From the NCBI GenBank assembly GCA_002269645.1, contig NIVC01000184.1, positions 310,001-374,000 on the forward strand: a DNA stretch of 64,000 bases, written 5' to 3'. Source of the stretch: Macrostomum lignano (lineage: Eukaryota). The translations under genes were made by a program, and so were the position numbers. Position 1 is the stretch's first letter; every line of letters begins with the position of its first letter. Shown piece by piece: positions 591 through 48,399 of the stretch. The notes below the pieces were generated by a model. It saw only the letters and a list, made by a program, of their open reading frames with translations. It had not been told where the DNA came from and ran no database searches.

Positions 591-619
591 AGTCCAACAG
601 TCCCCAAGCTTCACTTTAA

Positions 620-4616: not shown

Positions 4617-4617
4617 A

Positions 4618-10728: not shown

Positions 10729-11172
10729 TTAAGACACTGCTAAGTCCAGCTTCATGAGAGGCAGGTCCCGCTCCCACTGCTGCCACAGAGCCTCCTCGAT
10801 CCTCCCCCAGTCTTCGTCACTGAACCGGTCGCGGAATGACCGGATCATCTCGGCTGGTCCGTCCGAGTACTCAACAATGCTCACACTGCCGGCTGAGTCC
10901 ATGCTCAAGTTGGCCTGAATGAACACGCGCCTCGGTTTGCGCCGAGCAATCACGATGTCGCGCAGACGCTGGAAGTAGGCGTCAACGGTTGAGTAGGACT
11001 CAAAGAATGCCCGGCCGGCTTCCACACTGCAGGTGGACTTGAAGCTCTGCAGGCGCTTCAGGAACTCGCCAATGGCCGGCTTGGCCACGCTGGAGATCTT
11101 GGAGCGGTCCAGGCGGACAGTCAGGTCCGGCTTGCCGTCCTCGCCCGTGATTTCGTCAATGGTGACCAGGCC
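10729..11172 (-). CDS. DPP3: DPP3-A exon 6
   Basis: GLVTI...RLDRSKI...RRKPRRVFIQ; CAG acceptor; TAA stop. Confidence 0.93.
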   Translation of the reverse strand, partial: GLVTIDEITGEDGKPDLTVRLDRSKISSVAKPAIGEFLKRLQSFKSTCSVEAGRAFFESYSTVDAYFQRLRDIVIARRKPRRVFIQANLSMDSAGSVSIVEYSDGPAEMIRSFRDRFSDEDWGRIEEALWQQWERDLPLMKLDLAVS

Positions 11173-17080: not shown

Positions 17081-17135
<55 letters not shown>

Positions 17136-17898: not shown

Positions 17899-18580
17899 CT
17901 TAAATAAATTGTTGAGACATTCAATAGTAATCACAAGACATGCTTTACCGTAAAATGGGAGTTGCTGAGATGCAAGGACTCAAAGAGGTTTCATTCTTTT
18001 TTATCCCAATTTTAAATCTGACAATAGTGTCCATGCAAAGCTTTTTTTATGCAGTCCACTACACTAGAAGGTATGTCATAGAGAAGCTTAAAACCTATTC
18101 ACCTTAGTGTTTATAAAAAGCGAAAATAAAAAATGTTCAACAAACTTAATGGAATCGATAAGGTTTTATTACTTGGCCAGCTCAGAAACCGGGCAAACGA
18201 TTTGACAACAAAAATCGAACAATAATTCGTAGAAAAAAGACTATTTCCACTTTTTGTTTGTCTTTTATAATTGTCTTCTAGCTTAACAATTAGCAGCAGT
18301 TGACGGCATTTAGGAGCAGAATTGGCAGACTGGTTACAAAGTAAGCATATTAAAAACTACAATTGGTTTACGGCAAAACGCCAAAACATACGAGTAACTA
18401 CAAAGTCTATTAGTAACTTATTTTAATTTTTCTGTTTTCTTAAATCTGCCAAGTGTCACTCAGGACTATCAATTTTGAATTATAAGACTAAATCAACAGT
18501 CAATTTTAAAATTATGATAACTATTTTGAGTTCGATCCATCAACATGGAATAAATCAGCCAGACAACCGAATCCGCGTGC

Positions 18581-21612: not shown

Positions 21613-21860
21613 GTGCTCTGGTGAGGCGCTCTGATGTGCCAGAGGCCCAGGCTCGATTCCAAGTTCAGTCACATCGACTTGGGTCTCCTCGTGCAGTTAG
21701 CGCCCTTAAGTGCCGACCCCCCCCCCCCAAGCCACCGTGAAGTGTACATGCCTAACGATAAATAAAGTCAGGGCCGCTGATCAGGGGAGTTGGCGGAATG
21801 GGCAGTAATGCCTCTCACGGGTTGCAGGATAATTTCGCTTAAAGTGCATCAGGTTGCACA
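21613..21860 (+). mobile_element. SINE family 2, partial
   Basis: Reverse-complement match to 8757-9117 with an internal deletion. Confidence 0.7.
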
Positions 21861-21926
21861 CAACCTCTGCCTCTGGTAAAAGGCTATAAATTTATACAAA
21901 TTTATAGCAGATGCAACGTGACCAAC

Positions 21927-26300: not shown

Positions 26301-28164
26301 ACCACTGGCGGACACTAGTTTCTTTTGTAGGGTCGGCTAGGAGCGTCGGATAGAGCCGGCCTCACCACCTCGTGACGACGAGACCTGGCTGCCAACGGTC
26401 CCAGAGCCCGAGGTCTCGGAGGACCCAGAGCAAGCCGAGGCTGCCTGCCAGACCGAAGACCTCCCCGAAAGCCGAGATCCCTATGCGGCCGCCTGGACCG
26501 AGCTGGCTACGGAGGTCCGCCGGGCCCTGGCCCCCGGCCATTCGGAACCCCCAGCGCCGCCGAATTCGCCGGATCCGCAGGCGGCGGTCTCGGGAACGGC
26601 CAGAGACGACGATGGAGAGCCAGTGCCGGCGAACCTCGCGCCAGAGGTCCAAGCCGCCGTCAATCACTACATCAAGGCGGTGGATTACCGGGCTCAATTA
26701 CTGACGGGCGCCGCTCAGCTGGGCACCCTGCCAACCCTTGCGGGGTGGCCGCGGTGGGCCAGCCTCCGCGCCCTGAGTGACGACGACCGATAGCGGCTGA
26801 TGGACGAGGCCGCCCAGCTGTCCGCGCCAACCCTGCGAAACCCACCGCACCGGGAGACGGCCCGCACAGTCACCCGCTTGATCGCTGGCCGGGCTCCCGA
26901 GGTTCCGGACATTGTGCGGATGTGCGACCGGGTACCAAGGCTAAGCCGCGTGTGCTCATGACAGTGACCAGGAGAGACTAGTTAATCGGCACTGGCCCTT
27001 TCCCCTTTTAACTTGCCTAGGCCTGTGCTTGAAGGCGCATTTCGTTCGCTCCCAATCTCTAGCCCCTTTTTCTGCAGTCCAGGGGCAACTGCATTGCGTA
27101 CAAGCCTTTGAATCTCGGGTTTTCTTTACGGTTAGCCCGGCCGCATTTAACCCGTAAATTCGCCTTTTACGAGGTATTTTCCCCTTTCTGCCTTCCTCGG
27201 AAGCGCCCATTGTTCCCGCGGGCTCTGCCAATTGACTCCCGGCATCCCACCATATTTAGGCGCTAATTTTCTGGGCCGGCGCCCCCAACCTGCTACTGAA
27301 TTTTAATTTTTGCTGCCATTGTGCCCGAGAGGCTGGCCCGAGAGGCTTGCCAGCCTGTTCGTTTTTAAGCTCCATTTTAGGGCTCTGCCTTGGCGCGGGC
27401 AACCACTTTTAGGCCTCCGGTGCTGCGTAGGTTTGCCAAGTTTTAAGCAACGTCTGCTGCCCTATTTTTTAGCCTCTCGGGCTCTGCCAGCCTTTAAGGC
27501 ATCCCGCCATATTTAGGCGCCTTTGCTTCGCAGGGGCTGGCGCCCCCCGCTACGCCATTTCGGGCTACAATCCCGGCCTTGGCCCAGCCGTGCAATAATT
27601 CTGCAAGACAATTTTTAAGTTTGCTAAATAAATTTGCCAGACATTTTTAAGTAAACCCATTATTTTCAACTATTAAATAAAAGCACGCTCCGCTTTCACT
27701 TCGCCTCTTTATTTGAACGGGAAGAGTGTGAGTGAGCCGCTAGTTTATTCATCTAAAGTCATCCGTTCTCTAAGTGTCTGAAACGCCCGTTCTGCGTCTG
27801 CGTACATTTAATTTCCTATAATTGGTCTGACTGAGACCCCTCTAAAGCCAACCCCGAGCCTACGGCAGGCTAACACAGCCCTCCAATCCACCCACCAAGC
27901 CCCCACCAGGCGAGCGAGACGCTTTAAGGATCTGCTGATGAGACGCCCTGTACGTTGAGCTGCAAATCTGCACACGGTGCTGAGTTCGTTGACTTGTTTA
28001 TTTCGTTCCGACGGGAAGCTAACCTCATCGAAGGCCGAGACCCGAAGGAACTGGTGGCAGCACTACCTACGCTACTAAGAGGTAAGAATGCTTCCGATAG
28101 AAGAGGCTCGAGACTTAAGGTAAACTTAAGTGCCTAAACCGGCAAGCCAACAGCGTCTACTTCA
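23346..28164 (+). mobile_element. Non-autonomous LTR retroelement (gag-protease only, no RT or integrase)
   Basis: 5' LTR 23346-24349 and internally deleted 3' LTR 27727-28164 share about 400 bp. TG...CA ends, 4-bp TSD ATAT, degenerate tRNA-Leu-like PBS at 24351 and PPT at about 27715-27726. Confidence 0.8.
24364..25840 (+). pseudogene. Decayed gag and aspartic protease
   Basis: RRRQQGKNESAEEFADALR and DQFLAGI; zinc knuckle CYG*GQPGHRSAQC; protease VPFLLDSSS. Several stops and frameshifts. Confidence 0.8.
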
Positions 28165-31138: not shown

Positions 31139-31586
31139 AGTCTTAGATATAAGTTGGACTCTCAATCTCAGCGAGTCAGTTTGATGACCTCAGTCAGTTC
31201 AAAGACAACTTAATCACTCAGGACGGGAGTCTCGCCATTCGTGGTGATTGAGTTGTCATTGAGTCGTCATTGAGTCAGTTACTTTTTGTGGGAACAGATA
31301 GATTTATGGCACTGTTTTCGCGCACAGCAAAAGATATTCAATTCATTTTTTCTCGCTACTACTCATTAGTAGACGATCTGCTATACAACACCGTAATTAA
31401 CGGCAAGTAGAAAAATTAAACCCTAGCACGTTTTCATCAATTTCAAAGGTTTTTAAAGTAAGTCAGGCTGAATATTATGAATCTACTCCAGTAGCTGGGT
31501 AGATATTTGGCACCTGTCTAATAATCATCCTGGATAATAATCATAAAAATTTAAATTGAACCAGCCACTGAAAAAAATGCCCGAAC

Positions 31587-31885
31587 CTGTAGGACTCGAT
31601 GAAGCCCATGTAGGTCTCCACAGCCGGTCCCTTGTCGCGAATCCAGGCCCTCGACCCGGCCTTGTGCTCGTCGATGCTGCCGCCGGCGAACGAAGCCGCG
31701 TAGCGACGCAGCATCTCCGCTTGGTTGGCGTTGAGCGCAGCGGCTTCGGCGTTGCGCAGATGCGGCAGCGCCAGCGACATCAGCTCGCGGTAGTCACCCC
31801 GCTCGACACTGAACTTGCCGCTGCGACCGCTGGCCTCGTCGGTGAAGTCGGTCGGCTCAGCCACGACGCTCGACTCTGCAGAAGC
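31587..31885 (-). CDS. DPP3: DPP3-B exon 3
   Basis: 299 nt, near-identical to 16010-16308. Confidence 0.93.
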
Positions 31886-31914
31886 CTGACGGATGAGTCG
31901 GGAAGGAGCGATGA

Positions 31915-32285
31915 TGTTTTTTTTATTAGATTAGAGGCAGGGGGTTGTGTTCACCCTGGCGCACTTTAAGCGACATAGGCACACAACCGGTGAGAGGCAT
32001 TACTGCCCATTCCGCCGACTCCCCTGAGCAGGCATACAAGCGCGCGGAGACGTACGCAGGCACACACTCACACAGGAGTGTACAGTGGCCCTAACTTTAT
32101 ATTATCGTTAGGCATGTACACTTCACTGCGCCTTGGGGGGTTGGCTCTCAAGGCCGTTAATTGCACGAGCAGAGCCAAGCCGAGATTCCAATTCAGCCTT
32201 AAATTAATGTGACTGCACTTGGAATCGAGCCTGGGTCGCTGGCACACCAGAGCAGCTGCGCTACCGCTGGGCTACGGCCCCCCTT
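31915..32285 (-). mobile_element. SINE family 2
   Basis: Full copy with a 9-bp TSD GAGCGATGA (31906-31914 and 32286-32294). Absent at the homologous site of copy A (about 16330). Confidence 0.88.
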
Positions 32286-33578
32286 GAGCGATGAGGTTGC
32301 CCATTGGTTTTTAATTAGCGCGGCTCTAAAACAGTTTCTGAATCTGAAGAGCCACAAAATTACAACTGCCTCAACGTGCCTTGACTTCAGTGCCGAAGCA
32401 TATATGGCTGATTTTCTCGCCCTCCGATCAATAGGCGGAATAGCCACACTGTAGACACAAATACTAGGTTTAGGCTAGGCGTAAAGTCTCAAGTTCGAGT
32501 CTGCCTCCCCGCGGACAATTAAAATTGAATTTTTTTATTCATTTGTAGCTTGTGCATCGACTGATTGGAACATTTTTTGTTCAATTAGCAAGGCACACTT
32601 ATTGAATTAAATTTGCTATTCGGCACAAGTCGCATATCAAGGCTGACGGGGGGGATTACTGAGATTGCTTGCCTTTGGCAGATGCTTGCTATTTAGGGAT
32701 ATATGCTACAGGGGATGCTTTCTATCGGAGGATGCTTGCTATCTTGGGGTTTTTGAAATCGAAATCTGAAGAAAGAGATTAAATAATGCTATAGTGGAAA
32801 TTTTCATGACAAAGACAGCCCCGTGGATTTTTTGAGTGGAACAACCAAGGGATGGAGTTAGGATGGCAAGCTCCGACTGGGGTTGGAATTGGCTAGTCCA
32901 CTCTACTATTACCAAATATATAGTTGTGTTGGCCGAATTTCATAAATTTAGCTGTCGCTAACTTTTTTATCTTGATTGTACATTATCTGCTATTGTACAT
33001 TATTATTATTATTATTATTAGATTAGCATTCAGTTATGTTAATGTGGTCATGTATCGAGCGGCTAGTTTAGTGTTAGGCGTCGCCCTACTGTCAGCAGTT
33101 TCCCTCGCACCGCTTTGGGTTGCTGTCTGCCCCTGGGCAGCTTCCCCTTTTTTGGTCATACTGTGCTCCGTCCCTTTCCCTTTGCTCTGCGTTCTTGTTT
33201 GCAGCCATGGGCATCTCTGCTGTGGTTTGCTCTTGTTTCGCTTCTGTCCTGAGGTCACGGCAGTAGCCTGTTTTCCCTTGTCACGTGAGCAAGTCACATG
33301 ACAAGCCAAGCCTAAAGTGCAGCACACATATTTTTTTGTTTATTTCTGTTTATTTATTCAATTTTTATTTCTGTTAAGGATTCTCTATTTTTTCGGATAT
33401 CTCAATTTCTCCGTACAGTTCAATTCAGTTCGTCTCCGCTCGCGCGTGTGCGTACATTTGAACACTTTTGTTATTGGCCTGACTGTCCATTCAAAGGCAC
33501 CAAGCCAACAAGAGGCTAACTCTGCCCTCCCAACCGCCCATCGAGCCCGACAGGATCTGCTGACGAGACGCCTTAGTA

Positions 33579-35139
33579 CACTGCGTTCCAAGTTATTAAA
33601 CAAAGAGAGATAAATTGAATATTTTCAAAATTATTGATCGCAGCGACTTGCTGCTTGTGTCAGGTGTACATCAAGCTAGTACACACTCTGTGCAGCTCTG
33701 CCAATCACTAAACTTCTTGCTAGCACGTGCCAACAAACTTTCATTGCGCAACACAGCTGCTACACTGTTCCAACTTATTATGCAAGTCACAGAATTTCAC
33801 TGTGTGGTTCTGCAGCTGAATTTCTCTCACAATTTTCTGTGTGTATCAACCATGGGCAAGCGCCAGGATCTCTCCGATAAGGAAAAATCTCAAATCGGGC
33901 AACTTTTGGCAACTGGCCAAACTACTTTGTCTATCTCCAAGCAGCTTGGCAGAGATCATCGTACAGTAAAGAAATTCTTGGCTGATGTCACCAAATCAAG
34001 GCAGCGGACTCGCAAAACTAGTGTTCGAGGCATTTCGAATCGAAAACTTCGAGAAATCAAAAGAGAAATCCTTAAACATCCATTGGCCACCAGCAAGTTC
34101 ATCTTTGAGCAAGTGGATCTTGGTCATGTGCCAAGAACTACGCGGTGCCGCACTCTTGCATCTATCGCTCAATGCCGCAAGGCTGTCGCCAAGCCGATGC
34201 TGACCTCTCGCCATCGCCAGCTGCGCCTCAGCTGGGCGCAGAAGTATTTGAAGGCTGACTTCAGTTCAGTCATTTTTACAGATGAGACCAGGGCCACTTT
34301 GGATGGGCCTGATGGCTGGGCCAGAGGCTGGATGGTTGGAGACGAGGTGTCAGGGCAGCGCGTGAGGCGTCAGCAAGGCGGTGGAGGCATCATGATCTGG
34401 GCTGGCATTGTCAACGACACCATCATTGGCCCATTCCGTGTTCCTGATGGCGTCAAGGTCACGGGTGAAGCTTACCGTCAGTTGCTGCAGCTGAATTTTG
34501 TTCCCTGGCTGCGACGCCAGCCAGCAGCTCGCCGAAAGAAGCTGACTTTCATGCAGGACAATGCTCCCTCCCATGCTGCGAAGCTGACGACCAATTTCTT
34601 GAATGACCTCGGGTTCAAGGACGACAAGCTGATGGATTGGCCTTCGAATTCTCCGGATGTAGACGCCAAAACTCTGCCATCTTTGGAGCATTTTGAAGCG
34701 TAGCTTGTACAGCAATGGTAAGCAGTATCATTCCAAGCATGATCTGTGGGCTGCTGTGCAAGCTGAAGTGTCCAAGATACCTAAATCACATGTAAAGAAG
34801 CTGACATCATCGATGGACAGTCGCTTGGTAAAAATATTGCAAGTGAAGGGTGCCCGCATTAACTATTAATTGTGTGTTGCTGCTTGGGAGACTAAATTCT
34901 CCGATTTTCAATCAATATTTCATGCTGACGATGTTTTATTCCTAGTTGCATAATTATCTGGAACAGCAGAAAAGTCAATTTTTGATTATCATTTTGAAAA
35001 TACGCGTTTAATTTCATTCAGTTTTGGTGGTTAGTCTTATTGTTACGAAATACATTTCCTGCTAAAAAATTATGACTTTTGCTGCTTCATGAAAAAATTA
35101 TAAAAAAAACTGATTTGCATAATAAGTTGGAACACAGTG
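33579..35139 (+). mobile_element. TRT-like (DD37E) Tc1 transposon
   Basis: TIR CACTG(C/T)GTTCCAA(G/C)TTATTA, TA TSD and an inner repeat near 33760. 1561 bp. Confidence 0.9.
33852..34869 (+). pseudogene. Tc1 transposase with a disrupted catalytic Glu region
   Basis: GRDHRT, FTDETRATLDGPDGWARGW, RRQQGGGG and FMQDNAPSH. The expected LNPIEN after WPSNSPD is replaced by 22 unrelated nt, causing a frameshift. The downstream LWSILKR frame runs to TAA at 34869. Confidence 0.9.
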
Positions 35140-38099
35140 TACGTTGAGCTGCAAATCTGCACGAGGTGCTGTGTTCGCTCGTCTGCTATTTCTTCGCGAA
35201 GGAAGGTCACCTCACCGAAGGCCGAGACCAAACGGGCTGGTGGCAGAACTAACTACGCTACTAGGAGAATGCTTCCAAGAGGACGCGAGACTTAAGTATA
35301 ACTTAAGTGCCAGTAAATTGGGAAGCTAAAGCTCTGTACTTTAGCAGTCACGTTAATTGCCTGAGGAATTTAAGATCTCGTGAAGACGTTTAATTCCAAC
35401 TAATGAGACTCTTTTATTTCAGTCAGCAAAATTCGCAAAAGTTTCCTTGACTTTCTTTCTTTCTTTCCTGACTATCATTCAGTTTACGACTGGCAAGCAG
35501 CAATGCGCCATCATCAATGACGACGACGACATTGATGGCTATCGAACTGTTGGCCATCCAGTGTCTGTCATCACCGCAAACACGAATAAAAAACGGCTAC
35601 TCGTCATCTAGCCAAAATCGTCAAGGGTCCGTATGCCTCATTAAACCAAGTAAAAAAATTCCAAAACTCTGCCAAACCGCCGCAAATTCACAGGATCAGC
35701 AGACAGTGGTAGAAACCTGCCCGAAAAAAGAGGAGCAACTCCGGAACCTCAAAAGTGTAAACTCGGCTCTTCATCAGGAGCTCGCTGTGTCATTCGACAA
35801 TTCACGGCCTGGAGCAGCAGCTTGACACCCAACAAAAGACGAGTCAAGATTTAATAAAAGAAATTTTATTTCTTTTCTTCTTCGCACTTCTCTCCGTTTT
35901 CGCGGCTATTACTGCTCTAGCCAACGACGACAAAGGCGACACAGACGATGAAAATGAGAATAGCAAAGCCACGCCTTCTGACTACCAGGCACAACTGCTG
36001 CGCAACGTAGCGCAGCATGCTGGGTCGTCTAAAAACCATGACCGGGTTCTTGTGCCCCTGTCAGCCGCTCTGACGGACACTTTGGTATGCAGGGGTTCAT
36101 TATATTGCGTACGTACATTAATAGGTGTCGGAAATTCAGTTTGAATTTCTTACTCCGGTATTTTATTCACAACACCCGAATTGAATTTGTCTGCTTTTCA
36201 AATAATGAATACATAAATTATTATGACAATGAATGAATGAAAACGTATTCATTAAAATAAGCAACAGTTGCGTTCAATCGACCGAACTATATAAACGACG
36301 TAATAAGCAAGTATAAGACGGCAGCTAACATCGACGCTGTTTGCAAAGTTTTTGGAAACCTGCGCACCTTCATTAGAGCGCTTTCTCCAAAGAGGACCTT
36401 GTTAATTTGTCCTTTACAGGCCGCAGCTAAAGCGACGCAGTGCGTCAACTCGCGGACGCCCATAGGCTGGATGTCATTGTTACACATCTAAACAATAATG
36501 GCGTCGAAGTAGCTCGGAAGGAGCTGCAGCGGGTTTACGCGGCCTGTGTCGATGCCGTTTGGCAGGCCCAAAAGCGCAAGGCCCACTTGCCGTCCAATGC
36601 CAATGCCAATGCCAAGCTGCACAAGCAAAGCGCTGCTACCCTGGTACATGTTCCGCTAGTGCAGCCACCGACGCCGGTTTAGCAAAGAGCGATAATGGTT
36701 TAGTGTTGTGAGAAGCTTTTAAAAATGGAAAATCGTTTAAATTTCAGTGTAGTACGCTCGTATACTTTAGTATACACTGAGTATCAGAAAAGGGTGCGCT
36801 TTCGGATAATTTCTAGAATTTTGAGACAGGCCAATGGCGTAGGGGTGAGTACGGTAGTACCGTAACAAGGCAAGTTAGCAGAGAGCAGAAAGCGCAACTG
36901 ACAGTGCATAGTGGAATGACACCATTGCCAATTGTCGGGATTGCCTCTAGAACTGTCTGTCCTTTACTTAAAAAATTATTTTAATCGATGAAAATCGGAG
37001 CTATATACACCGTCCTATTTCTCCACAGATAAAAGCCCACGTTATTTTGGGTCAAAGTCGGAGTTGTTCGGAGCTACGGCGGAAGCTACGGCGCTAGTTC
37101 CGGCGCCAGCTACGACGGCGGCTACGGCGCCAGTTCCGGCGCCAGCTACGGCAACAGCTACGGCGCCAGCTACGGCGGCAGTTACGGCGCCAGCAGCGGC
37201 GGCAGCTACGGCGCGGCCAATAACAATGGCGCGGCCAGCTACACCGCCAACTTTGGCACCCATGCAAACCGGAAAGACCGACAGCTAGCCAATCCGGCGA
37301 GCGAGAGCTGCGCTGAAAGAGTCTGTAAGAGCTGGGCAGGACTACAAGTGCCCTTTTTGTACAGGGTGCGTTGTGCGCAGGTCGAGATTTGCGCAGCACG
37401 TTAAAGTGTGTCATCGCCTTGTGTACGAAAACTTTCTGAAAGAGCATGATGGCGATGCTTTAAAAGTGAACCATGCTCTGAGGGCTTTTATAAAGGCGAA
37501 GGACGAGCAAAGCAGGTAAGCAGGTAGGCTTTTGGAGGTAACCACAAAATCATTTAGAAATGGGGTTTTAGAGCTGTAGTCTATAGTTTCTAAGACTTAC
37601 TGGTAGTGATACTGCTTTTATTTAATATTATTATCAGCTTTATTTATTGATAATTATTATCAATTGGTATCAACATTATCTTAACTATTTTCATAATGCT
37701 TAGCTTCAGTTATAACTTAATGAGGAGCTGTTTGTGCTACCTTGGCAGAAAATAATTGTCCTAGCAAAATCTAAAATTCTGCAAACTACGAGTATGCCAA
37801 TTGGCATATTATTTTCCTCAACTGTCCTTTTGGCATAGTTGGCACAGTTATGACATGATGTGAGTCAAGGTTAAGATAATAAGCGGTGCAAAGTTATCGT
37901 TTGTATTTGACGGTTGAATCATGAATCTTGAGCGCGTAGCTCTAGACGGGGTCTTGAGGGGAAGAAGGGGTGAAACCGAGGAAGCTCTGCGAAGAAATAG
38001 TGTAATTCCATAGACTAACTAAACAGTAACAGAACGAAAGTTGAGCGAAGCTTAAGTCACAACAGACAGAAAAACAATAATGCTATAGGCTGAGCTCTA

Positions 38100-38705
38100 A
38101 TGCACAACATGTCCCCTTCATGGAACAAAGGGCTTGGACCCTCCTGTCCCGTAGCAGGGGTACCCGGATTTTGGTCGACGTTCGGAACTGGAGCATCGGT
38201 TTCATAGCCCTCCTGTAACTGCATGGCCTCTAGCACGCATTGCTGCTCCCGACTGTCTCGAAGTCAAGCGATCAGCGCCATTCGAATCAACTCTTCCGAT
38301 GGGCTTTGGCTCGAGCGTAGAGTCGAATTTGCAATCGATTGCAAAGCCGAAGCCGGCTCACAAAGTCGCCAATGGACTCGCTAGGCGCTTGACGAACGTT
38401 GAAGAACCGCGCCCGCTCCGCCACAGTCAGCTTCTCTCTGGGTCGTAGGTAGTCCAGGAGTGTTTTCTCAATGTCCGCAAACGACAGGTCGGCTACTGAC
38501 CGAGACACAAGATTTCGTGGAGACGCAAGATCTTGCAATTTTTCAAGTGCAGTCAGACAGCAACAAGCTAGGAAATTGTCGGCGATGCATTTCTTTTCTG
38601 CAGTGTCAGTCCATCCTTTCGCTCTGGCCAACGCTTGGAAGGCAGTCAGCCATGTTTGCGCCCTCTCCGGCTTTTCCAGCGGCAGGTTGCCGAGTTGCGA
38701 TGCTA
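38100..38705 (-). pseudogene. Gypsy gag remnant nested in an intron of the YR gene
   Basis: WLTAFQALARAK...KLTVAERARFFNVRQAPSESIGDFVSRLR. Possible LTR at about 37856-38109 preceded by a purine tract. Confidence 0.65.
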
Positions 38706-40811
38706 TTGATGTGAGTCTATAATTATGCTAATCAGCATATTACTATGTCAGACAGAACAAAAGACAATTGTTACATACTTATTCGAATATAATTGTGCCA
38801 CAACTGTGCCATAACTGTCAATGAAGCCCATTTTTGTTACAAATTAAGAATTATTTTTGTGTTTTTTCTCTGTTTTTTATATGCCATTTGACAAAGTCAA
38901 GGGACAAATATTTCCTGATGTGTTTGTGTTACATTCTTGCACTATCTAAAAATTCTTAATTTCTTATTTTTTTGATATTTTTAGATGCACAAAGTGTCAA
39001 TGCCTTGAATAAAATTTTATTCCCTATCATTCCCTAACTCTAACTCTCTAAAAAACACAGTCTAAACAAAGGCATTAAAAATTGCAGGACAAAAAGCATG
39101 CGCGCCTTATAAGCGATGAGCAGGTATCGGCGCTCATGGCTTTCAAGAGGCAACTGCTGGCCGAAGCTGAAGCCGAAGAAGATCAGGCGAAAGGCATCAG
39201 CGACAAGGAGATGCTTGCTGTCGGAATGGTCATTTGTTTCGGCGAGGGAAATGCTAATTGATGGACGTAGCCTGCAATTTTTACATTGCTGGAGGTGCGG
39301 CAATGGGCCGAGCATCCTGAGAATGAACTTGGGTGAGCCTCCTACGAATTCTTTTACTATGCACTAAGTAATGCCTAGAGTAAAAGTGGCTTTAAACTGT
39401 TCCTTTTTGCAATTGAATTCGTCACAACTACAAAACATTTCGTCCCCTAGACTAACATAGATAGTTAATTAATTTTCTAATACTGATCCTATTAAAGTCT
39501 AAAATAAGTTTAAAGTCGTTATTAAATAAATTAGACTGAGAACGAAAAGTTTTGCAAACTGGGATGAAACAGCGCAAACGCTACTGTCTATGGCATATTC
39601 TGAATTAAGCTCTCCTTTTCGTAGATAAAGTATGTCGCAGTTTGAAAGAATTAAATTGCCAAAAGGTATACTAGAAGTACTAGAAGCACACAATATCTTA
39701 CATTACATGTTCCATTAATCCACCAGCATAAAATTAGGACACTCACAATTTCCAGAAGGGTCACTTTCAAATGAACTTGTATTGTCATGCACTACAAACT
39801 CAGCAGTATAGAGTGTATATAGCAGTATATACGAGTATAAAGTGTGCTTATGTTTAGATCAGAGAATGGTAAGCATTATAAAAAAATCTACTTGGTTTTG
39901 TCAAGCCAAAAATGGTTAAATTTTTTACGATTTCTCTAAAGCTGTGCAATATTTTTTAATTTAATTCAGGTGGCCAAGCACAAGACGACGCAGTACTTTG
40001 GCGCTGCGAAACTGAGTGCCGCAGCCTGCTTCTAGGCCTGCTTCAACGACGCGAAAGCCAAAACACAACTGCCGAGGACGCTGCAAGTCCGTTCATTAAA
40101 TTCAAGTATGGCAGCTTCGAAGGAATGTTCCGAGAACAGGACTCGGTTCAGCGAGTTATTGCACAATGTAACATGCACAAGCTTTCGTGTGTTCATTGAA
40201 ACGAAAGTGAGTATTGCTGTTCCTTAAATTTTATAAACAATTCTTCTGTGTGCCTCTTAATTCTTATCACTGCGAGTCAGCGATTTCTTCCCTTCTTAAT
40301 ATTGTGACCTAGCTAATTTGCAATCGACAAGCGAGGGGTATTTATGGATAATTCTTGTATGTATATTTAGTTATATAATTATTTACACTAACAAATAATG
40401 TCTTTCATATTTATCCTTAATGTCAGAAATTATAAATTTCGATTGTTAATTTGTTTATTAACTTTTATTCATATCATTTTTCCAGGCTCTCCTGGCTGGA
40501 GAAGATAAACAGCTGGTGGCTGACTGACTACCATACTCCAAAAGTGGCACGTGATGCATATCAAGTGCACACGGACTGCTACCGAAGAGCGGGCAGCGAC
40601 GTTCTCATGAAGGCAAATGAAGCGTCGACTGGCCATGTAATTGGAATTAAGAAATTAAAAGTATTTTTTCACTAGCCTTTACGAAAATTATTTCATTATT
40701 ATTATATTTGATCTTAGAAAGTAAATAAAAGCCGTCGAACCTTCTGCCCAATTTAGGTTGCCAGCAATCTGCAAGCAGGAGTGCCACAATGCCGTTCCAC
40801 AGATGCAAAAC

Positions 40812-41522
40812 CGGCTGAGGCCAAGCGCCGCCGGCCGCTTAGCAACGCCACAGCCTCTGGCAACGAGACATCGGCTGAGGCCAAGCGCCGCCGGCCGCTT
40901 AGCAACGCCACAGCCTCTGGCAACGAGACATCGGCTGAGGCCAAGCGCCGCCGGCCGCTTAGCAACGCCACAGCCTCTGGCAACGAGACATCGGCTGAGG
41001 CCAAGCGCCGCCGGCCGCTTAGCAACGCCACAGCCTCTGGCAACGAGACATCGGCTGAGGCCAAGCGCCGCCGGCCGCTTAGCAACGCCACAGCCTCTGG
41101 CAACGAGACATCGGCTGAGGCCAAGCGCCGCCGGCCGCTTAGCAACGCCACAGCCTCTGGCAACGAGACATCGGCTGAGGCCAAGCGCCGCCGGCCGCTT
41201 AGCGACGCAAAAGCCTCTGGCAACGAGACATCGGCTGAGACAAAGCGCCGCCGGCCGCTTAGCGACGCAAAAGCCTCTGGCAACGAGACATCGGCTGAGA
41301 CAAAGCGCCGCCGGCCGCTTAGCGACGGCACAGCCTCTGGCAACGAGACATCGGCTGAGGCCAAGCGCCGCCGGCCGCTTAGCGACGCAAAAGCCTCTGG
41401 CAACGAGACATCGGCTGAGACAAAGCGCCGCCGGCCGCTTAGCAACGGCACAGCCTCTGGCAACGAGACATCGGCTGAGACAAAGCGCCGCCGGCCGCTT
41501 AGCGACGCCACAGCCTCTGGCG
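40812..41522 (+). repeat. Coding minisatellite, about 12 x 60 bp
   Basis: Unit encodes AEAKRRRPLSNATASGNETS; variant units appear toward the 3' end. Confidence 0.97.
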
Positions 41523-42440
41523 GTGGCAGCGAGAATCCGGTCGGAAAGAAGAACGAGCAGGGCGACTTAGTTTGTGCCTATTGGCCGAACGGAAAAGAAA
41601 GCTGGTGGCCAGCCATGGTATGCCGACCATCCTTAAGGAGAAAAACCTTGTCGAGGCGGCCTGCACTTGCAATTTTTTGGCAAGCCGCCAACGCGTGGTT
41701 GGATATTCAACTGGCGCCAGTTTGATAAGCAAGCCGATCTCAAGGGCGAAAGCAAATCCTTCAAAAACAGGCAATTTCGGCTTCGGAGATTCCAAAAAAG
41801 CATGAACGTCTTGAAAAAATTTTGTCAAGCTGTCATTGTCATCGGTGTATAGACATGTAAAGAACAATGTTAACATTTTTAATCATGTTTTCCTATATCC
41901 TAAGTTGTAAGTTTTTGCTTATATGCTCAATTTTCTATTGTAGATTGTTGTGTTTGCGTTGTGCTTTTTTTACTCTCCATTACCAACTGAATGCGTTTAA
42001 CTTTTTCAAACTTCAACCTATGCTATATTTTTTGTCCATATTTAATGCTAACTGTAAAAGTTTTGCTTTGTATGCTTTTGCTGTGATTTTGTGCTGTCTT
42101 ATTGTTTGTATCCTTTTATTGTACTTTATTTTTTTAGCATTTTATTATTCGAACAGTATTAGTTTAATGCTTTTAAAATTTTGATTTGTAACGTACTGGT
42201 GTATGGATCAAATAATGGTGTTTTAGATTGTTGTGTAATAAAACAAAATATATAGTCGTAAAATAAATTGTTTATTATAAAATTTTATAAATTTTAATAT
42301 TGTTTTTTTTGTTTTCATTTTAACTTTATACTTGTATACCTACAGCATTTCGGGTCATTTATCCACTACATGTATATCGAACTGAAACTTATATTTTTAT
42401 TATATAACTTCTTCGACTAGCACTAGCACTAGACCAGCAC

Positions 42441-43447
42441 ATCTGTCCAGTTCGTGTCATTCCTTTATCTGTATAATGTCATTTGTCCGACCAAGGTCAT
42501 CTGTCCATTTCGTGTCATTCCTTTATCTGTATAATGTCATTTGTCCGACCAAGGTCATCTGTCCAGTTCGTGTCATTCCTTTATCTGTATAGTGTTATTT
42601 GTCCGACCAAGGTCATCTGTCCAGTTCGTATCATTCCTTTATCTGTATAGTGTTATTTGTCCGACCAAGGTCATCTGTCCATTTCGTGTCATTCCTTTAT
42701 CTGTATAGTGTCATTTGTCCGACCAAGGTCATCTGTCCATTTCGTGTCATACCTTTATCTGTATAGTGTCATTTGTCCGACCAAGGTCATCTGTCCATTT
42801 CGTGTCATTCCTTTATCTGTATAGTGTCATTTGTCCGACCAAGGTCATCTGTCCAGTTCGTGTCATTCCTTTATCTGTATAGTGTCATTTGTCCGACCAA
42901 GGTCATCTGTCCATTTCGTGTCATACCTTTATCTGTATAGTGTCATTTGTCCGACCAAGGTCATCTGTCCATTTCGTGTCATTCCTTTATCTGTATAGTG
43001 TCATTTGTCCGACCAAGGTCATCTGTCCATTTCGTGTCATTCCTTTATCTGTATAGTGTCATTTGTCCGACCAAGGTCATCTGTCCAGTTCGTGTCATTC
43101 CTTTATCTGTATAGTGTCATTTGTCCGACCAAGGTCATCTGTCCATTTCGTGTCATTCCTTTATCTGTATAGTGTCATTTGTCCGACCAAGGTCATCTGT
43201 CCATTTCGTGTCATTCCTTTATCTGTATAGTGTCATTTGTCCGACCAAAATCATCTGTCCAGTTCGTGTCATTCCTTTATCTGTATAATGTCATTTGTCC
43301 GACCAAGGTCATCTGTCCATTTCGTGTCATTCCTTTATCTGTATAATGTCATTTGTCCGACCAAGGTCATCTGTCCATTTCGTGTCATTCCTTTATCTGT
43401 ATAGTGTCATTTGTCCGACCAAGGTCATCTGTCCAGTTCGTGTCATT
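42441..43447. repeat. Satellite-like array, about 17 x 58 bp
   Basis: Unit ATCTGTCCA(T/G)TTCGTGTCATTCCTTTATCTGTATAGTGTCATTTGTCCGACCAAGGTC. Confidence 0.97.
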
Positions 43448-43658
43448 GCCTGATTAATAGGGCCGTCGCCCGACTGTCGGGGCGTCCGCCCATTTGGTGC
43501 GCCTGGCGGACACCGACGCCCAACCAGGGCGGCCAGTCGGCGACTGCCAGGGTGGAAACTTTTTTCCCACTGGGTTATTTAAATTTCGCACCTGTACAAT
43601 CCGAAAAGAGCCGCCGTCCGCACACTTGAACAGCCTCTAATTTATCTAAATTTCGCAC

Positions 43659-43920: not shown

Positions 43921-44183
43921 CTGGATTTTACCAACAAAAACTAGCTAGAGTTTAACAGTTAAAGGCTAGCGAGAGAGAGAGAGAGGAGAGAGAGAGAGAG
44001 CTCTTGGCATCCTCTGTTCTGATGTCTATGGCCGAAGTAGCAACTTTTTGCCTTTTTATCAAATTGCTTATGAGATCATACACATATATATGCAGCCAAG
44101 GTATTTCAACTCAGCGAAGACAGCAAGTCACGTGACAGCAATCTGCGCAGCCACAAATCAACGAGAACATAGATAATACTCAC

Positions 44184-44554
44184 TTGTCGAGCGCCTCCTC
44201 AGATAGATCCGGCAGAATTTTCGTGTCGCCAAATGATTTATAGTTGCCCAAGTTGCCCAGCACCTGAGTGGCGTACATGAGAAATGCGTCCCAGTCCGCA
44301 TCGGAGACGCCAGCTTTGCAGGCGGCTCGCAGCTGCTCAGGCGTCTGTCGCCGGAACACCGACTGCAGCACCAGGAAGAGTCCGGGAGACTCAGCGCTGG
44401 TCTGGTGCAGGCAGATCAGGCCGCCTATCCAAGAGGCCCGGTACAGGTGATAGGCGTACGCCTTCTCAGCCTGGCTCAGCTTCTCAAATGCGGGCCTGCA
44501 GGCCAAGAAAGTCACCGGGGCGTCTGTGGGCACCGTGTAGAGAGATCGGTCCAT
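44184..44554 (-). CDS. DPP3: DPP3-B exon 1 (from the conserved Met)
   Basis: 371 nt, near-identical to 17372-17742. Confidence 0.93.
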
Positions 44555-45543
44555 AACTGGCTGCTGAGTTGCTTGGAGACTCGCTGAGAACAGAGCTACT
44601 TGCTGCACTGGTTGCTGGGTGGGTAGCGAGACTGCTGCTGCTGCTGTGCTTGGCAAGGTTCCAAATCGAGAAGCGGCTGCTGCTAGAGGGCGTAAAAAAG
44701 AGAGCTGCGGGTGTAAAAAATAACGTGTTTTATTTTTACCTGCGACTTTTGTGCCAGTTCTGTGTACCACAGACTAAAGTGCTGACTTCGAATTCGTGAA
44801 ACCTATCTGACCTAGATCATGGATAAATAATATTACTGGAACGCCAGGGGGTGTTGCATAAAATTGATTAGTCGCAAGTTACAAGCTACAAGCTTGACAA
44901 GTGAATAGTGAATGGAGACTTGTGTTGCATAGAGACTTGACTAGTTACAAGTAGGCGATAAGCTACAAGTGAATAGTGAATAGTCGCGCTACAAGCGGTT
45001 TGTTGCATAGAATCTAATGTTGACTAGTGTCATAGTAAATTCGAGTGTGACAAGTTGAGTAAACCACGAGCTATTTAAGCTTGTAATCGGTTGAAAGCAT
45101 ATCGCATCCATTGAGCGAAAATATTCTACGAGTCAGATTCCGAAGATTCCGATGCAGATGAGCCAATTAAGCGTCCCCGAACATTCAAGGAAAGGATAAA
45201 TTTCGACTTTTATGTTGACTACAATGATCATCAGCCGAGGTTTCGCTTGCACGAGGAACATGTCGACGAATTGTTTCATCTGATTGGCGAGCGTCTGCAG
45301 CAGTCGCTCTTGTACTCTCGTACTAGACCAAGCAGGAGCTTGTTTTCGTTTGTTAAAGGCATTATAATAACACTAACTAACCCTGTGTGTGGGATGACAA
45401 CGATGGCTTCTTATCTAACTTATCATTTGACTTATCTGGTCAAGTTCTACGAGCTCGTACAATATAGACCCCAAAAATTTTGCTTGCCCAGTGAATGTCT
45501 ATGGTCAATCGTGCGCACAAGCTTGTAGCTTGTAGAAAACCTA

Positions 45544-47446
45544 CACCTTTTTGCATTTAATTTCAACCAAAGTCGCATTCAATTTCTGCAAGCTGGCATT
45601 CAAAATCGGCAATCTAAATTCAGCCAACCAAATCTTCATTCAATTTAAGCATGCTCGCATTCCATTTTAGCGAACCACATTCAATTTCGGCAATCTGTAT
45701 TTAATTTAATTTTGTCTCAAACTTGTCTGCTCGTCATGGATAAGCCTCATGGATAAACTTTATTGACGCGTGTAGATTTTGCACTCAATCTCGGCAATCT
45801 GCTTTCAAATTCAGCAAAATTTTATTAACTAAACGTAAAACGAAACAAGTGTCGTCCAATACATGTACAGTGCTATAAGGAACAGAAGCAGAAATCGAAG
45901 TCACGTCAAGTGTGGCCCTTCAGTCCCCATTGATGTGCATCCTGGCCAGGCATCTCGGTACAAAGCTGAAGCAGTGATTGTACCACTGGATACACTTGCC
46001 CTGAGTGACGCTCTCGTTCACTGTTAGATCGGCGAAGCGCATCAGCTCGTCCCTTCGATATTCAGCCAGTGTACGCCCAGCGTGAGCTTCGTCGGATGGA
46101 TTGATGAAAACTTCGCGGCTGTCACTGAGTTCGCTTTTAATGGCCGCCTTCCATGCGGAGATGGCGCTCTCAACGGGTGTTAAAAATGGGCTGTATCTAG
46201 GGAGTCGACGGAACTTAGCCAGTCCTACAACCTCTTGTAGTTCAGCGTCATTATGGCTGCTGACATTTATCAAAAAACAGGTATGCAAGTTGGTGCGGCC
46301 AGGCCATTTGAGAGTTACCAATCACAACTTGCAGAAATTCGGCGAATCTCTCCTTTGTCATGCCGCGACTGTACGCTTGATAGTGGATCAGACCAATCTG
46401 AGGAGAAACGGCGACGCAGATGGTGATGCGAGTGCCCTTTTGGCCGGAAACGGTTCTGTAGGCCCGTTGACCGCAGAGCGACATTCCCTGTTGACGTCGC
46501 ATCCAGGTGTCGAATCCGAATTCATCGATGAACACCTTGGGAGCATTGATAACATCGACCGAGCACCACTAGTTACAATTAGCTTCACGCTCTGCTAGGA
46601 CTGCCGGGGAATTGCGTTCTGCGGGCACGTCTTGAACAAGTTTGATAGTGTACGCATGGCCCTCCAGTTGTCGGCTTAGTGTAGTCATCGAAACAGCTGT
46701 TTTGTCCGGAAATCTTATGCGCAATCGATCATTGATTCCTTTTAGCGTCAGAACAGGATTGTTTTCCAGTAGTTCAGTACAATGCTGCAGCATCTCCTCA
46801 TCGAACTTTGAGTACCGCCTTCCGCCCTTACGTCGTTTATATCGGCGGCCTGATCGAACTATTGAATAGGCGGTGGCTCTCTTGATGTTCATGAGCTCTG
46901 CAAGTTGTAAATAGTCCTGCCCTGTCTCGTGGGCATCGATAAGGCGGGCTCTATCTCCGTCAGAAACTCGTGCGTATGGTCCTCGACCTTCTTCTTCTGA
47001 CTCAATGTCTTCGTCACCTTGTTCTTCAATGATCTCATCGTCTCATATCTATGCTCGATTTCTACACTTGCAGTTGAAAAAAACAGAAAGCTGGGGATGA
47101 ATTGAGATGAAAGGATTAACAAAGCCTCTTTGGATGTAAACTGTACATGGAACCGAACATTCGTCTGTGGTTGCAATCCAATGTGTTTTGCTGAATTTGA
47201 AAATTGTCGAAATTGAGTGCAAAATCTGCACGCGTCAATAAAGTTTACCCATAGACGAGCAGACAAGTTTGAGACAAAATTAAATTAAATACAGGTTGCC
47301 GAAATTGAATGTGGTTCGCTAAAATGGAATGCGAGCATGCTTAAATTGAATGAAGATTTGGTTGGCTAAATTTAGATTGCCGATTTTGAATGCCAGCTTG
47401 CTGAAATTGAATGCGACTTTGGTTGAAATTGAATGCAAAAAAGGTG
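45544..47446 (-). mobile_element. IS630/Tc1-like transposon with about 250-bp TIRs, nested in the Harbinger element
   Basis: 45544-45800 is the reverse complement of about 47200-47446; TA TSD on both sides. Confidence 0.9.
45920..47046 (-). pseudogene. IS630-like transposase (one stop, frameshifts)
   Basis: HTH; VFIDEFGF; FDNVSSH after correcting a +1 insertion; LPRYSPFLTPVE. Confidence 0.85.
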
Positions 47447-48399
47447 TACAAGTGCGTGTGTGCAACGAAAATCACATACACTTGTAGCTTGTCACTATTC
47501 AGCTTGTTACTTGTCGCATCACACTAATCAATTCTATGCAACACCCCCATGAAGCTCGATTTTTTCGGTTTAATTCATTGACAAGTACCAGCTTGAACGG
47601 TTGGATTGCTTGAAGCTCAAAATTTTGACTTTCTAAAAATAAACGTGACAAAGTTGAATGCGCGCTTTCACTGTTATGTCTTTGAGCTTGTCGAAGCTAA
47701 GTCACTTAATTTCTAAAGTTAAGATTAAAATGGTATATTGGTACAGTGGGTGAAATTTGTCAACACAAACATGACTGATGGGATGAGGAAAAACTTCAAA
47801 TTCGACGAAATAAGTGAACTGTGTCCCTACAGCCAGCTTGTATCCGTCTCTCTCGTCTCTCTTTACCATTAGCGCTATAATTTGCTTTGCGTTGCAATGC
47901 TTTATCAATCAATACAAACTTTATCAATTCGACTAGCGTTGTACACGCTCAAGACAACATACACGCTGATGAATTTCACTCTTCTCTACCTAAAACACAA
48001 GCTTTTTAACCCTATAGTAGCACACCCTAACCCTATTATTGTGCATGCATGACGAAATCCAAGTTAAAAAGGTATAGCTAGAAATGTTTCAGTAGCGTTA
48101 GAATTGAAACTTTTTACTGTAACAGGATCCCGGCAGGGGTTCAATACTAAAAATTCGCTTTCTACTTTGAGAAAGAAATCAAAACCGATTTTAAAAAATT
48201 TTCCAGTACACAAAAAGGAATAGATTTTGGGTTATTTAATTATTTATTTCAATAAAATAACTGTTGCAAAAAAGTCGAAAGGAAAAACTTCATTAAAATC
48301 TGTTAACTAAAGACACACGATAAAAATGAATACGGAGATGAAAAATGAAAAAAAACCGGTTGAGTGACTGCTTCTCAAATGCATTTCTGTGGGATTAAT

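What the first reader, a model, noticed from the sequence alone, without database searches (positions are those of the whole stretch)
35921..41852. Intron-containing tyrosine recombinase fused to a PWWP chromatin reader and a C2H2 finger, nested antisense in a DPP3 intron
Seen: plus-strand segments bounded by AG/GT signals, mostly invisible to the ORF track because of stops. In order they translate to a C2H2 finger (CPFC-x12-H-x4-H, about 37355-37425), YR-like motifs (GMVICFGEGNAN*WT*PAIFTLLEV; VAKHKTTQYFGAAKL; NVTCTSFRVFIETK; LVAD...HTPKVARDAY), 12 KRRR-containing repeats, and a PWWP domain (GDLVCAYW..KESWWPAMV; LHLQFFGKPPTRGWI). The last three junctions (40206/40486 and 40636/40757) are phase 0, so YR and PWWP would share one polypeptide once the +1 lesion at about 40530 is corrected. 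Knowledge: YRs use an R...HxxR...H...Y catalytic set; Crypton DNA transposons carry spliced YR genes; PWWP domains bind H3K36me2/3 nucleosomes in gene bodies, as LEDGF does for lentiviral integration. Inference: a Crypton-like transposon with a built-in reader that steers insertion into transcribed gene bodies, which fits its position inside an intron. I do not know of a described YR-PWWP element. This copy is dead and its ends are not identified.
Basis: partly seen in the sequence, partly recalled or inferred. Interest (0 to 1): 0.85.

Follow-up and report, generated by a model that had tools for sequence, protein, structure and literature searches.

The report
Dead zinc-finger/PWWP gene in DPP3 intron
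A broken, intron-containing gene for a nuclear protein with one zinc finger, a run of basic repeats and a PWWP chromatin-reader domain sits inside an intron of a duplicated DPP3 gene, but the proposed recombinase (transposon) identity of its middle part failed every test I could run.

Summary
The sequence features are real. On the plus strand, 35921-41852 holds GC-rich exons with AG/GT borders separated by AT-rich introns. They encode one C2H2 finger, a 12-fold KRRR repeat and a PWWP domain. One spliced frame, read as it stands, links the last central exon to the start of the PWWP. The gene is dead, with about ten disabling lesions. It lies antisense in an intron of a DPP3 (peptidase M49) gene, inside an ~11 kb TE-rich block that the neighbouring compact DPP3 paralogue lacks, so it most likely arrived by insertion.

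The tyrosine-recombinase reading is not supported. Pfam, PHROGs, NCBIfam and PDB gave no match. Profiles built from 150 Crypton-like proteins plus Cre and lambda Int did not separate the exons from background. A block test that recovers left-out recombinase families at the top 0.004-0.5% places this region only in the top 3-12%, and gives nothing for box I. No relative, intact or not, was found anywhere, and no ends were identified.

Best reading: a dead gene carried in by mobile DNA and encoding a chromatin-tethered protein. I put the recombinase reading at about 0.25-0.3. A copied cellular gene is a serious rival.

The parts
35921..41852 (+). Broken multi-exon gene, listed as one part. Exon model: 35921-36084, 36420-36643, 37029-37515, 39088-39332, 39970-40206, 40486-40636, 40757-41852. 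It carries about 3-4 premature stops and 6-7 frame disruptions.
   Evidence: AG/GT borders and exon GC 0.50-0.61 against intron GC 0.26-0.42; translations; codon-usage frame scores. Whether the two most upstream exons belong to the gene is inferred from GC content and splice signals only.
37349..37414 (+). Single C2H2 zinc finger (C-x2-C-x12-H-x4-H)
   Evidence: PDB phmmer: Tramtrack finger E=0.004, SUZ12 Zn E~0.15. Pfam Zn_SUZ12 E=1.3e-4, zf-Di19 E=0.0075.
39088..40636 (+).
   Evidence: The quoted strings are present. No recombinase signal in Pfam, PHROGs, NCBIfam or PDB, in custom HMMs or in block PSSMs.
40812..41521 (+). 60-bp tandem repeat, 11.8 copies at 96% identity, coding 12 basic 'KRRRP' units that look like nuclear localisation signals
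   Evidence: TRF score 1273; 12 KRRR in the open spliced frame.
41561..41835 (+). PWWP domain, interrupted, with SWWP and FFG motifs
   Evidence: Pfam PF00855 E=0.0019. PDB best or near-best matches are DNMT3B PWWP for the first part and NSD2/MSH6 PWWP for the last part, in the same order as in those domains.
41853..42439 (+). AT-rich (GC 0.26) 3' region after the stop codon, with AATAAA at about 42237; a candidate 3' UTR
   Evidence: Sequence read directly.
38287..38631 (-). Gag-like retroelement fragment nested in the long third intron of the gene, on the opposite strand; not part of the gene
   Evidence: BLASTP to the gag part of the window's Gypsy-like polyprotein, E=0.002.
32360..43580 (.). 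About 11.2 kb block present in this DPP3 intron but absent from the paralogous intron (copy 1, ~16400-16535); its edges are not sharp
   Evidence: Self-BLAST and edge alignments.
44180..44770 (-). Upstream DPP3 exon (N-terminal part) flanking the intron
   Evidence: 98% identical to the paralogous exon at 17153-17868; ORF.
31541..31864 (-). Next DPP3 exon, flanking the intron on the other side
   Evidence: Pfam Peptidase_M49 E=5.6e-26, profile positions 89-169.
33765..35139 (+). Neighbour in the same block: Tc1/mariner element with 24-nt terminal inverted repeats, TA duplication and a 362-aa ORF
35138..35329 (+). Neighbour: LTR-like fragment, 77% identical to the LTRs at 23941-24349 and 27757-28164
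42440..43447 (.). Neighbour: 58-bp satellite of about 17 copies at 97% identity, just downstream of the gene

Best explanation
This is a dead but complete copy (first exons to stop codon and a candidate polyadenylation signal) of a spliced gene for a nuclear, chromatin-tethered protein. The protein had an N-terminal low-complexity stretch, one C2H2 finger (DNA contact), a central region of about 230 residues of unresolved function, twelve basic KRRR repeats (nuclear import or DNA contact) and a C-terminal PWWP domain (nucleosome/H3K36me-type reader). It entered the first large intron of the upstream DPP3 paralogue as inserted DNA after the DPP3 tandem duplication, along with or next to other transposon debris. 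It has since decayed at a neutral pace. The most likely source is the coding gene of a DNA-type mobile element, with the finger and the PWWP serving DNA and chromatin binding. Shown: the exon structure, the finger, the repeat, the PWWP, their linkage in one frame, the decay, and the paralogue-specific position. Inferred: arrival by insertion, mobile-element origin, and any role of the PWWP in target choice. Whether the central region is a very divergent tyrosine recombinase is open; I put that at about 0.25-0.3.
For: Exon/intron model with canonical signals and a strong GC contrast. C2H2 finger. PWWP. One open spliced frame from the last central exon through 12 KRRR into SWWP. The two DPP3 paralogues are 93-98% identical where they align, and the compact copy (about 7 kb) has a roughly 1 kb intron where this copy has about 12 kb. 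The extra ~11.2 kb also holds a Tc1/mariner element with a TA duplication, an LTR-like piece, a SINE/MITE-like insert and a satellite. About ten lesions in roughly 1.9 kb of coding sequence is what a few percent of neutral divergence would give (my estimate), which is compatible with decay since an insertion after the duplication. No homologue of the finger exon or the first central exon exists among 5.8 billion protein clusters by word search. That is more usual for lineage-specific element genes than for conserved cellular readers. Capture of reader domains by transposons is a documented phenomenon (bioRxiv 10.1101/2021.11.30.470311).
Against: No second copy, no termini, no target-site duplication and no terminal repeats were found. 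No catalytic domain of any transposase class was recognised. Seven or more exons is many for an element gene and ordinary for a cellular gene. PWWP is common in cellular chromatin proteins and was not among the reader domains that study named as fused to transposons. A deletion in the compact paralogue, rather than an insertion here, cannot be strictly excluded because the block edges are not sharp.
Confidence: 0.45

Rival explanations
1. One reading: a Crypton-like DNA transposon whose tyrosine recombinase is fused to a PWWP reader, which tethers the recombinase to H3K36-methylated gene bodies and so directs insertion into introns.
For: In consecutive exons, and in the order and approximate spacing of the recombinase catalytic set, one can read a K-x-K-T string, an x-x-x-R string followed by T and G at the usual distances, and H-x8-Y. 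Codon-usage scores favour the frame that holds the K-T string at the start of its exon. At the registers expected from those strings, the two box II blocks score in the top 3-12% of the window background. The H..Y exon is in the same spliced frame as the PWWP. Animal Cryptons lack terminal repeats (PMC3212892), so the missing termini are not an argument against.
Against: No significant match to any recombinase model or structure. No signal with an HMM of 150 Crypton/DUF3504-type proteins or with mixed HMMs that include Cre and lambda Int, using all filters off. Pairwise scores to Cre, lambda Int and the window's own Crypton-type ORF are no better than shuffles. In leave-one-family-out calibration, real recombinases of an unseen family reach the top 0.004-0.5% for each of three blocks; here box I gives nothing (71-96th percentile) and the box II registers were chosen after looking. 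Only four of the six catalytic positions can be read as the expected residue. Animal Cryptons are described as having no C-terminal domain (PMC3212892). None of 150 Crypton-like proteins carries a PWWP.
Confidence: 0.25
2. A DNA-level copy (unprocessed pseudogene) of a cellular multi-exon chromatin-reader gene with the layout C2H2 finger, unknown domain, PWWP. It was placed in the intron by a segmental insertion or captured and carried by another transposon. The recombinase-like strings are chance.
For: Seven or more short-intron exons, its own stop codon and AATAAA. The domains are typical of cellular chromatin proteins: the closest structures are Tramtrack and SUZ12 fingers and DNMT3B/NSD2/MSH6 PWWPs. 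All recombinase tests were negative (as above). The surrounding block is a mosaic of several unrelated elements that could have carried or accompanied it.
Against: No homologue was found by word search for two exons among 5.8 billion clusters, nor in metagenome or viral contigs. A recently duplicated conserved cellular gene would be expected to have relatives there, unless the lineage is unsampled. Insertion of exactly one whole gene into an intron is unusual for segmental duplication.
Confidence: 0.3
3. Not one gene: the PWWP/repeat exon, the finger exon and the central exons are unrelated fragments that happen to lie on the same strand.
For: Two exon junctions are out of phase as they stand. 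The upstream exons have no domain match.
Against: Uniform GC contrast and canonical splice signals across all seven exons. The last two junctions are in phase and give a 361-codon open spliced frame. The level of decay is similar throughout.
Confidence: 0.05

Closest known systems
Crypton DNA transposons (Kojima & Jurka 2011, PMC3212892)
   Same: A single large gene that can contain introns, no terminal inverted repeats in animals, and dead copies known inside introns of host genes (e.g. ATF7IP). The proposed catalytic strings occur in the recombinase order.
   Different: No detectable similarity to Crypton/DUF3504-type recombinases, whereas a true member in the same window scores E=3e-53 against the same profile. 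Animal Cryptons are described as having no C-terminal domain; here there is a PWWP. Copy number and ends are unknown.
Transposons that have captured chromatin readers (chromodomain Gypsy 'chromoviruses'; PHD/Chromo fusions, bioRxiv 10.1101/2021.11.30.470311)
   Same: A C-terminal histone-mark reader attached to an element-encoded protein, thought to tether insertion to a chromatin state.
   Different: The enzyme partner is unidentified, and element status is itself unproven.
LEDGF/p75 tethering of lentiviral integrase (established knowledge)
   Same: A PWWP that reads H3K36-methylated gene bodies would bias integration into transcribed genes.
   Different: In that system the PWWP is on a host cofactor bound by the integrase, not fused to the enzyme. 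Nothing here shows binding or targeting. In the alignment to DNMT3B, the residue before SWWP, which is aromatic in DNMT3B, is not aromatic here.
Crypton-derived cellular genes with DUF3504 (ZMYM2-4, KCTD1, QRICH1, KIAA1958; PMC3212892)
   Same: Zinc fingers combined with a recombinase-derived domain that has lost catalytic residues, in chromatin or transcription regulators. This would also explain incomplete catalytic strings.
   Different: No DUF3504 or Phage_integrase match, and no PWWP in that family.
Cellular PWWP proteins (DNMT3B, NSD2, MSH6) and the C2H2 fingers of Tramtrack and SUZ12
   Same: Closest sequence matches of the two recognisable domains.
   Different: The matches are domain-level only (E 0.004-0.4). 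The overall architecture matches none of them.

Membership tests
Tyrosine recombinase / phage-integrase superfamily | Significant sequence or profile similarity to the catalytic domain | tested here: not met
   No hit in Pfam, PHROGs, NCBIfam or PDB for any exon read as it stands. Custom HMMs with filters off: the exons rank inside the window background. Power is reduced by the frame breaks.
Tyrosine recombinase / phage-integrase superfamily | Catalytic R-K-H-R-H/W-Y set in order, inside conserved boxes I and II | tested here: inconclusive
   Four of six positions can be read as the expected residue, in the right order. Block PSSMs at those registers: box II in the top 3-12%, box I no signal. 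Left-out true families reach the top 0.004-0.5%.
Tyrosine recombinase / phage-integrase superfamily | Integrase/Cre catalytic fold | not testable with these tools
   A fold prediction needs an uninterrupted protein.
Crypton transposons | Recombinase that groups with Crypton recombinases | tested here: not met
   The HMM from 150 relatives of the window's Crypton-type ORF finds that ORF (179 bits) but gives at most about -1 bit for the exons of the finding.
Crypton transposons | Repeated, dispersed copies with shared ends | not testable with these tools
   There is no other copy in the 64 kb window. The source genome is not available. Exact-product look-ups found nothing.
Crypton transposons | No reverse transcriptase or DDE transposase in the element | tested here: met
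   No such domain on the gene's strand. The gag-like piece is a nested fragment on the other strand.
PWWP domain | Profile match plus the (S/P)WWP motif, followed by the FFG strand at the right distance | tested here: met
   PF00855 E=0.0019 (19.1 bits, below the 25.6-bit gathering score, on a part-domain). SWWP and FFG are present. DNMT3B and NSD2/MSH6 PWWPs are the best or near-best PDB matches of the two parts, in the same order as in those domains.
PWWP domain | Aromatic cage for methyl-lysine | tested here: inconclusive
   The positions aligned to the WW and FF residues are aromatic. The position aligned to the aromatic residue before SWWP in DNMT3B is not. The copy is decayed, so the original residue is unknown.
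C2H2 zinc finger | C-x2-4-C-x12-H-x3-5-H with similarity to known fingers | tested here: met
   C-x2-C-x12-H-x4-H at 37349-37414. Tramtrack finger E=0.004; Zn_SUZ12 E=1.3e-4.

The most novel reading that the evidence does not exclude
A previously undescribed lineage of intron-bearing tyrosine-recombinase DNA transposons, too divergent for current profiles, whose recombinase is fused through a basic repeat linker to a C-terminal PWWP reader and preceded by a C2H2 finger. This would be a built-in version of the LEDGF-type tether that biases insertion towards transcribed gene bodies.
Probability: 0.22. Interest if true: 0.7.

Novelty: new variant of a known kind. Interest (0 to 1): 0.35.

Why it matters
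If the central domain were a recombinase, this would be the first transposon of that class seen with its own PWWP reader. It would be a natural parallel to the LEDGF/integrase tether and to chromodomain retrotransposons, and an example of how mobile DNA chooses 'safe' sites in gene bodies. As the evidence stands, it shows something more modest: an orphan zinc-finger/PWWP gene, without detectable relatives in very large databases, was inserted into a recently duplicated gene's intron and then died. The compact DPP3 paralogue next door serves as an approximate 'before' state for that intron, with edges that are not sharp. It also shows that motif strings read by eye in the right order can fail calibrated tests.

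Tried and rejected
1. Word-index homologue searches with the first central exon, the finger exon and the window's Crypton-type ORF: nothing.
2. My one exhaustive HMMER search went to the Crypton-type ORF, to obtain a recombinase comparator set (2247 relatives). It was therefore not available for a segment of the finding.
3. Viral contigs with four segments and metagenome contigs with two segments: no relatives.
4. Exact-product look-ups to identify the source assembly: not on record. The organism remains unknown. The nearest named relative of the other Crypton-type ORF is a bivalve protein at 33% identity.
5. Pfam, PHROGs and NCBIfam on all exon fragments, and PDB phmmer: no recombinase.
6. 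Pairwise Smith-Waterman with shuffles against the Crypton-type ORF, Cre and lambda Int: z between -1.2 and 0.9, apart from one z=2.2 alignment at a non-catalytic position.
7. phmmer of 152 recombinases against all fragments of the region: only a low-complexity artefact.
8. Custom HMMs and block PSSMs, with leave-one-family-out calibration.
9. Search for terminal direct or inverted repeats across the whole block: none beyond the Tc1 TIRs and the two tandem arrays.
10. tRNA and Rfam scans of the window: nothing.
11. Literature: no paper contains both 'Crypton' and 'PWWP'. The papers with 'PWWP' and 'tyrosine recombinase' are unrelated.
12. Rejected idea: that the gene is part of the neighbouring LTR element. 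It has introns and shares no similarity with that element's interior.
13. Rejected idea: that the SUZ12-like finger implies a VEFS-type Polycomb protein. There is no VEFS match.


Full report
WHAT IS THERE. The window is eukaryotic and rich in transposons. On the plus strand between 35921 and 41852 there are seven GC-rich segments (GC 0.50-0.61) separated by AT-rich spacers (GC 0.26-0.42). Every segment is preceded by AG, and every one except the last, which ends at a stop codon, is followed by GT. After the stop codon comes a 590-bp stretch with GC 0.26 and an AATAAA. This is therefore a complete spliced gene and not a collection of chance ORFs.

RECOGNISABLE DOMAINS. The third exon carries a single C2H2 finger (37349-37414; C-x2-C-x12-H-x4-H). 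Its best solved-structure match is a Tramtrack finger (E=0.004), followed by the zinc region of SUZ12 (E about 0.15). Pfam gives Zn_SUZ12 at E=1.3e-4. The last exon starts with a 60-bp repeat, 11.8 copies at 96% identity, which encodes twelve KRRRP units. It ends with a PWWP domain. Pfam PF00855 scores E=0.0019 on the first part alone. The first and last parts, searched separately against the PDB, take DNMT3B and NSD2/MSH6 PWWP domains as their best or near-best matches, at the correct positions and in the correct order. Each of these hits is individually weak. Their agreement, order and spacing make the PWWP assignment secure.

ONE POLYPEPTIDE. Exon F is 237 nt and exon G is 151 nt. The downstream frame of exon G splices in phase to the last exon and gives, as the sequence stands, 361 codons without a stop. 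Those codons include the H-x8-Y string, all twelve KRRR units and the SWWP motif. Two more upstream junctions are out of phase as they stand.

STATE OF THE GENE. It is dead. Using frames chosen by domain matches and by a simple codon-usage score, I count roughly three to four premature stop codons and six to seven frame disruptions (frameshifts or out-of-phase junctions). These fall in both the central region and the PWWP region. A gag-like fragment of a retroelement lies on the opposite strand in the long third intron (38287-38631; E=0.002 against the gag part of the window's Gypsy-like polyprotein).

CONTEXT. The minus strand carries two tandem DPP3 (Pfam Peptidase_M49) paralogues. One is compact, about 10.7-17.9 kb. 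The other is expanded, about 18.6-44.8 kb. The finding lies antisense in the intron of the expanded copy between the exons at 44180-44770 and 31541-31864. The aligned flanks of that intron are 93-98% identical between the paralogues. The compact copy has about 130 bp where the expanded copy has about 11.2 kb (32360-43580).

That block also contains a Tc1/mariner element with 24-nt inverted repeats and a TA duplication (33765-35139), which is inserted into an LTR-like sequence. It also contains a 58-bp satellite (42440-43447). A ~370-bp repeat insert (31914-32284), bounded by a 9-bp duplication when compared with the compact copy, lies in the same intron just left of the block.

The tandem unit must have been compact when it duplicated, because otherwise several precise deletions would be needed. 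The simplest history is therefore that the gene arrived by insertion after the duplication. About ten lesions in about 1.9 kb of coding sequence is what a few percent of neutral divergence would be expected to produce; that figure is my own estimate, not a tool result. The block edges are not sharp, and no terminal repeats or duplications that would delimit the gene's own carrier were found.

THE RECOMBINASE CLAIM. By eye the central exons do show, in order and with plausible spacing, a K-x-K-T string, an x-x-x-R string followed by T and G, and H-x8-Y. I tested this in every way the rules allow, using each exon or in-phase splice product exactly as it stands.

(a) Pfam, PHROGs and NCBIfam profile scans and PDB phmmer gave no recombinase hit.

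(b) The window contains a genuine Crypton/DUF3504-type recombinase ORF at 13695-14168 (Pfam Phage_integrase E=3e-9). I used it for the one exhaustive search and obtained 2247 relatives. An HMM built from the best 150, run with all filters off on every six-frame fragment of the window, finds that ORF at 179 bits. It gives nothing for the finding, with best fragment scores around -1 bit.

(c) I fetched Cre (phage P1) and lambda Int from the phage collection and aligned them with 58 full-length Crypton-like catalytic domains. The catalytic R, HxxR, H/W and Y columns align across the three families. HMMs built from this alignment again left the finding's exons inside the background. The best fragment ranked 20th of about 2080 at 1.2 bits, and it is not a catalytic block.

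(d) Pairwise alignments with shuffling against the ORF, Cre and lambda Int were no better than chance.

(e) Ungapped block profiles for box I, the HxxR block and the H..Y block rank the true ORF first for both box II blocks.

(f) Calibration. When each family was left out in turn, its members scored in the top 0.004-0.5% for every block. The test can therefore see remote recombinases, and the finding is 10-1000 times weaker. The registers were also chosen after looking.

The region is thus not a member of the Crypton/DUF3504 group, and it has no statistical support as a recombinase. A very divergent recombinase cannot be excluded, because the frame breaks cut the domain into short pieces and no fold test was possible.

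RELATIVES. None were found. Word-index searches with two exons, four viral-contig scans and two metagenome scans and exact look-ups were all negative. None of 150 Crypton-like proteins carries a PWWP. No paper in the library contains both 'Crypton' and 'PWWP'. Kojima & Jurka state that animal Cryptons have no C-terminal domain and no terminal repeats (PMC3212892). Capture of reader domains, mainly Chromo and PHD, by transposons is documented (bioRxiv 10.1101/2021.11.30.470311).

INTERPRETATION. The best-supported statement is that a complete, spliced gene for a zinc-finger, basic-repeat and PWWP nuclear protein was inserted into this intron and then decayed. I favour the coding gene of a DNA-type mobile element as its source (0.45 including all catalytic possibilities). 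The reasons are that one whole gene arrived in a transposon-accreting intron and that it has no detectable relatives in very large protein collections. A copied or captured cellular chromatin-reader gene is a serious rival (0.3): the many exons and the cellular flavour of both recognisable domains speak for it. Chance juxtaposition of unrelated exons is unlikely (0.05). Any statement about H3K36me binding or target choice is inference from what PWWP domains of DNMT3, NSD and LEDGF do (established knowledge). In the alignment to DNMT3B, one aligned position that is aromatic there is not aromatic in this copy.

NOVELTY AND SCORE. Under the favoured reading this would be a new variant of a known kind, namely a mobile element with a captured chromatin reader. 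Under the rival it is an ordinary unprocessed pseudogene of an orphan gene. With a single dead copy, no relatives, no ends and a failed recombinase test, I score interest at 0.35. The most novel reading that remains possible would deserve about 0.7.

Noticed in passing
window 13695-14168 (+): A genuine Crypton/DUF3504-type tyrosine-recombinase ORF (Pfam Phage_integrase E=3e-9, HxxR and GH..Y intact). It lies antisense inside the compact DPP3 paralogue. It has 2247 relatives in the representative library; the best is 66% identical (a JGI metagenome contig), and the second-best hit, at 33% identity, is a Tegillarca granosa protein named as Tyr-recombinase domain-containing. The upstream part of its gene is decayed.
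   Followed up: partly
window 5741-6074 (+): Two overlapping fragments match the N-terminal part of the Crypton-like profile (E=0.002 and 0.03 within the window). This may be another Crypton-type remnant.
   Followed up: no
window 10729-17934 and 18581-44770 (-): Tandem duplication of DPP3 (Peptidase_M49). One copy is compact at about 7 kb; the other has expanded to about 26 kb through transposon insertions. Aligned parts are 93-98% identical.
   Followed up: partly
window 322-4866 (-): Gypsy-like LTR retrotransposon with 100% identical 250-bp LTRs (322-571 and 4617-4866) and long open gag-protease-RT-RNaseH-integrase frames (1078 aa plus 288 aa). This looks like a very young insertion.
   Followed up: partly
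window 23941-28164: Second LTR element with 409-bp LTRs at 97.6% identity and gag-like ORFs (24796-25837). A 77%-similar LTR-like piece lies at 35138-35329, just upstream of the finding.
   Followed up: no
window 33765-35139 (+): Tc1/mariner element with 24-nt TIRs, a TA duplication and a 362-aa ORF (HTH_Tnp_Tc3_2, weak DDE_3), inserted into the LTR-like sequence.
   Followed up: yes
window 45542-47448: Long inverted repeats of about 270 bp (45542-45819 and 47186-47448, 91% identity) flank minus-strand ORFs with HTH_32 and DDE_3 matches. This is another DDE transposon, upstream of DPP3 exon 1.
   Followed up: no
window 42440-43447: 58-bp satellite of about 17 copies at 97% identity, directly downstream of the dead gene's AT-rich 3' region. 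Whether it belongs to the same inserted unit is unknown.
   Followed up: no
window 31914-32284; also 8751-9118 and 21628-21881: A repeat family of about 370 bp (SINE/MITE-like). The copy at 31914-32284 is flanked by a 9-bp duplication when compared with the compact DPP3 paralogue, which provides an empty site.
   Followed up: partly
window 37072-37214 (+): A 12-bp tandem repeat (about 12 copies) inside the finger exon. It reads as a Gly/Ser/Tyr-rich stretch in one frame and an Ala/Thr/Pro-rich stretch in the finger's own frame. Which frame was used is unresolved.
   Followed up: no
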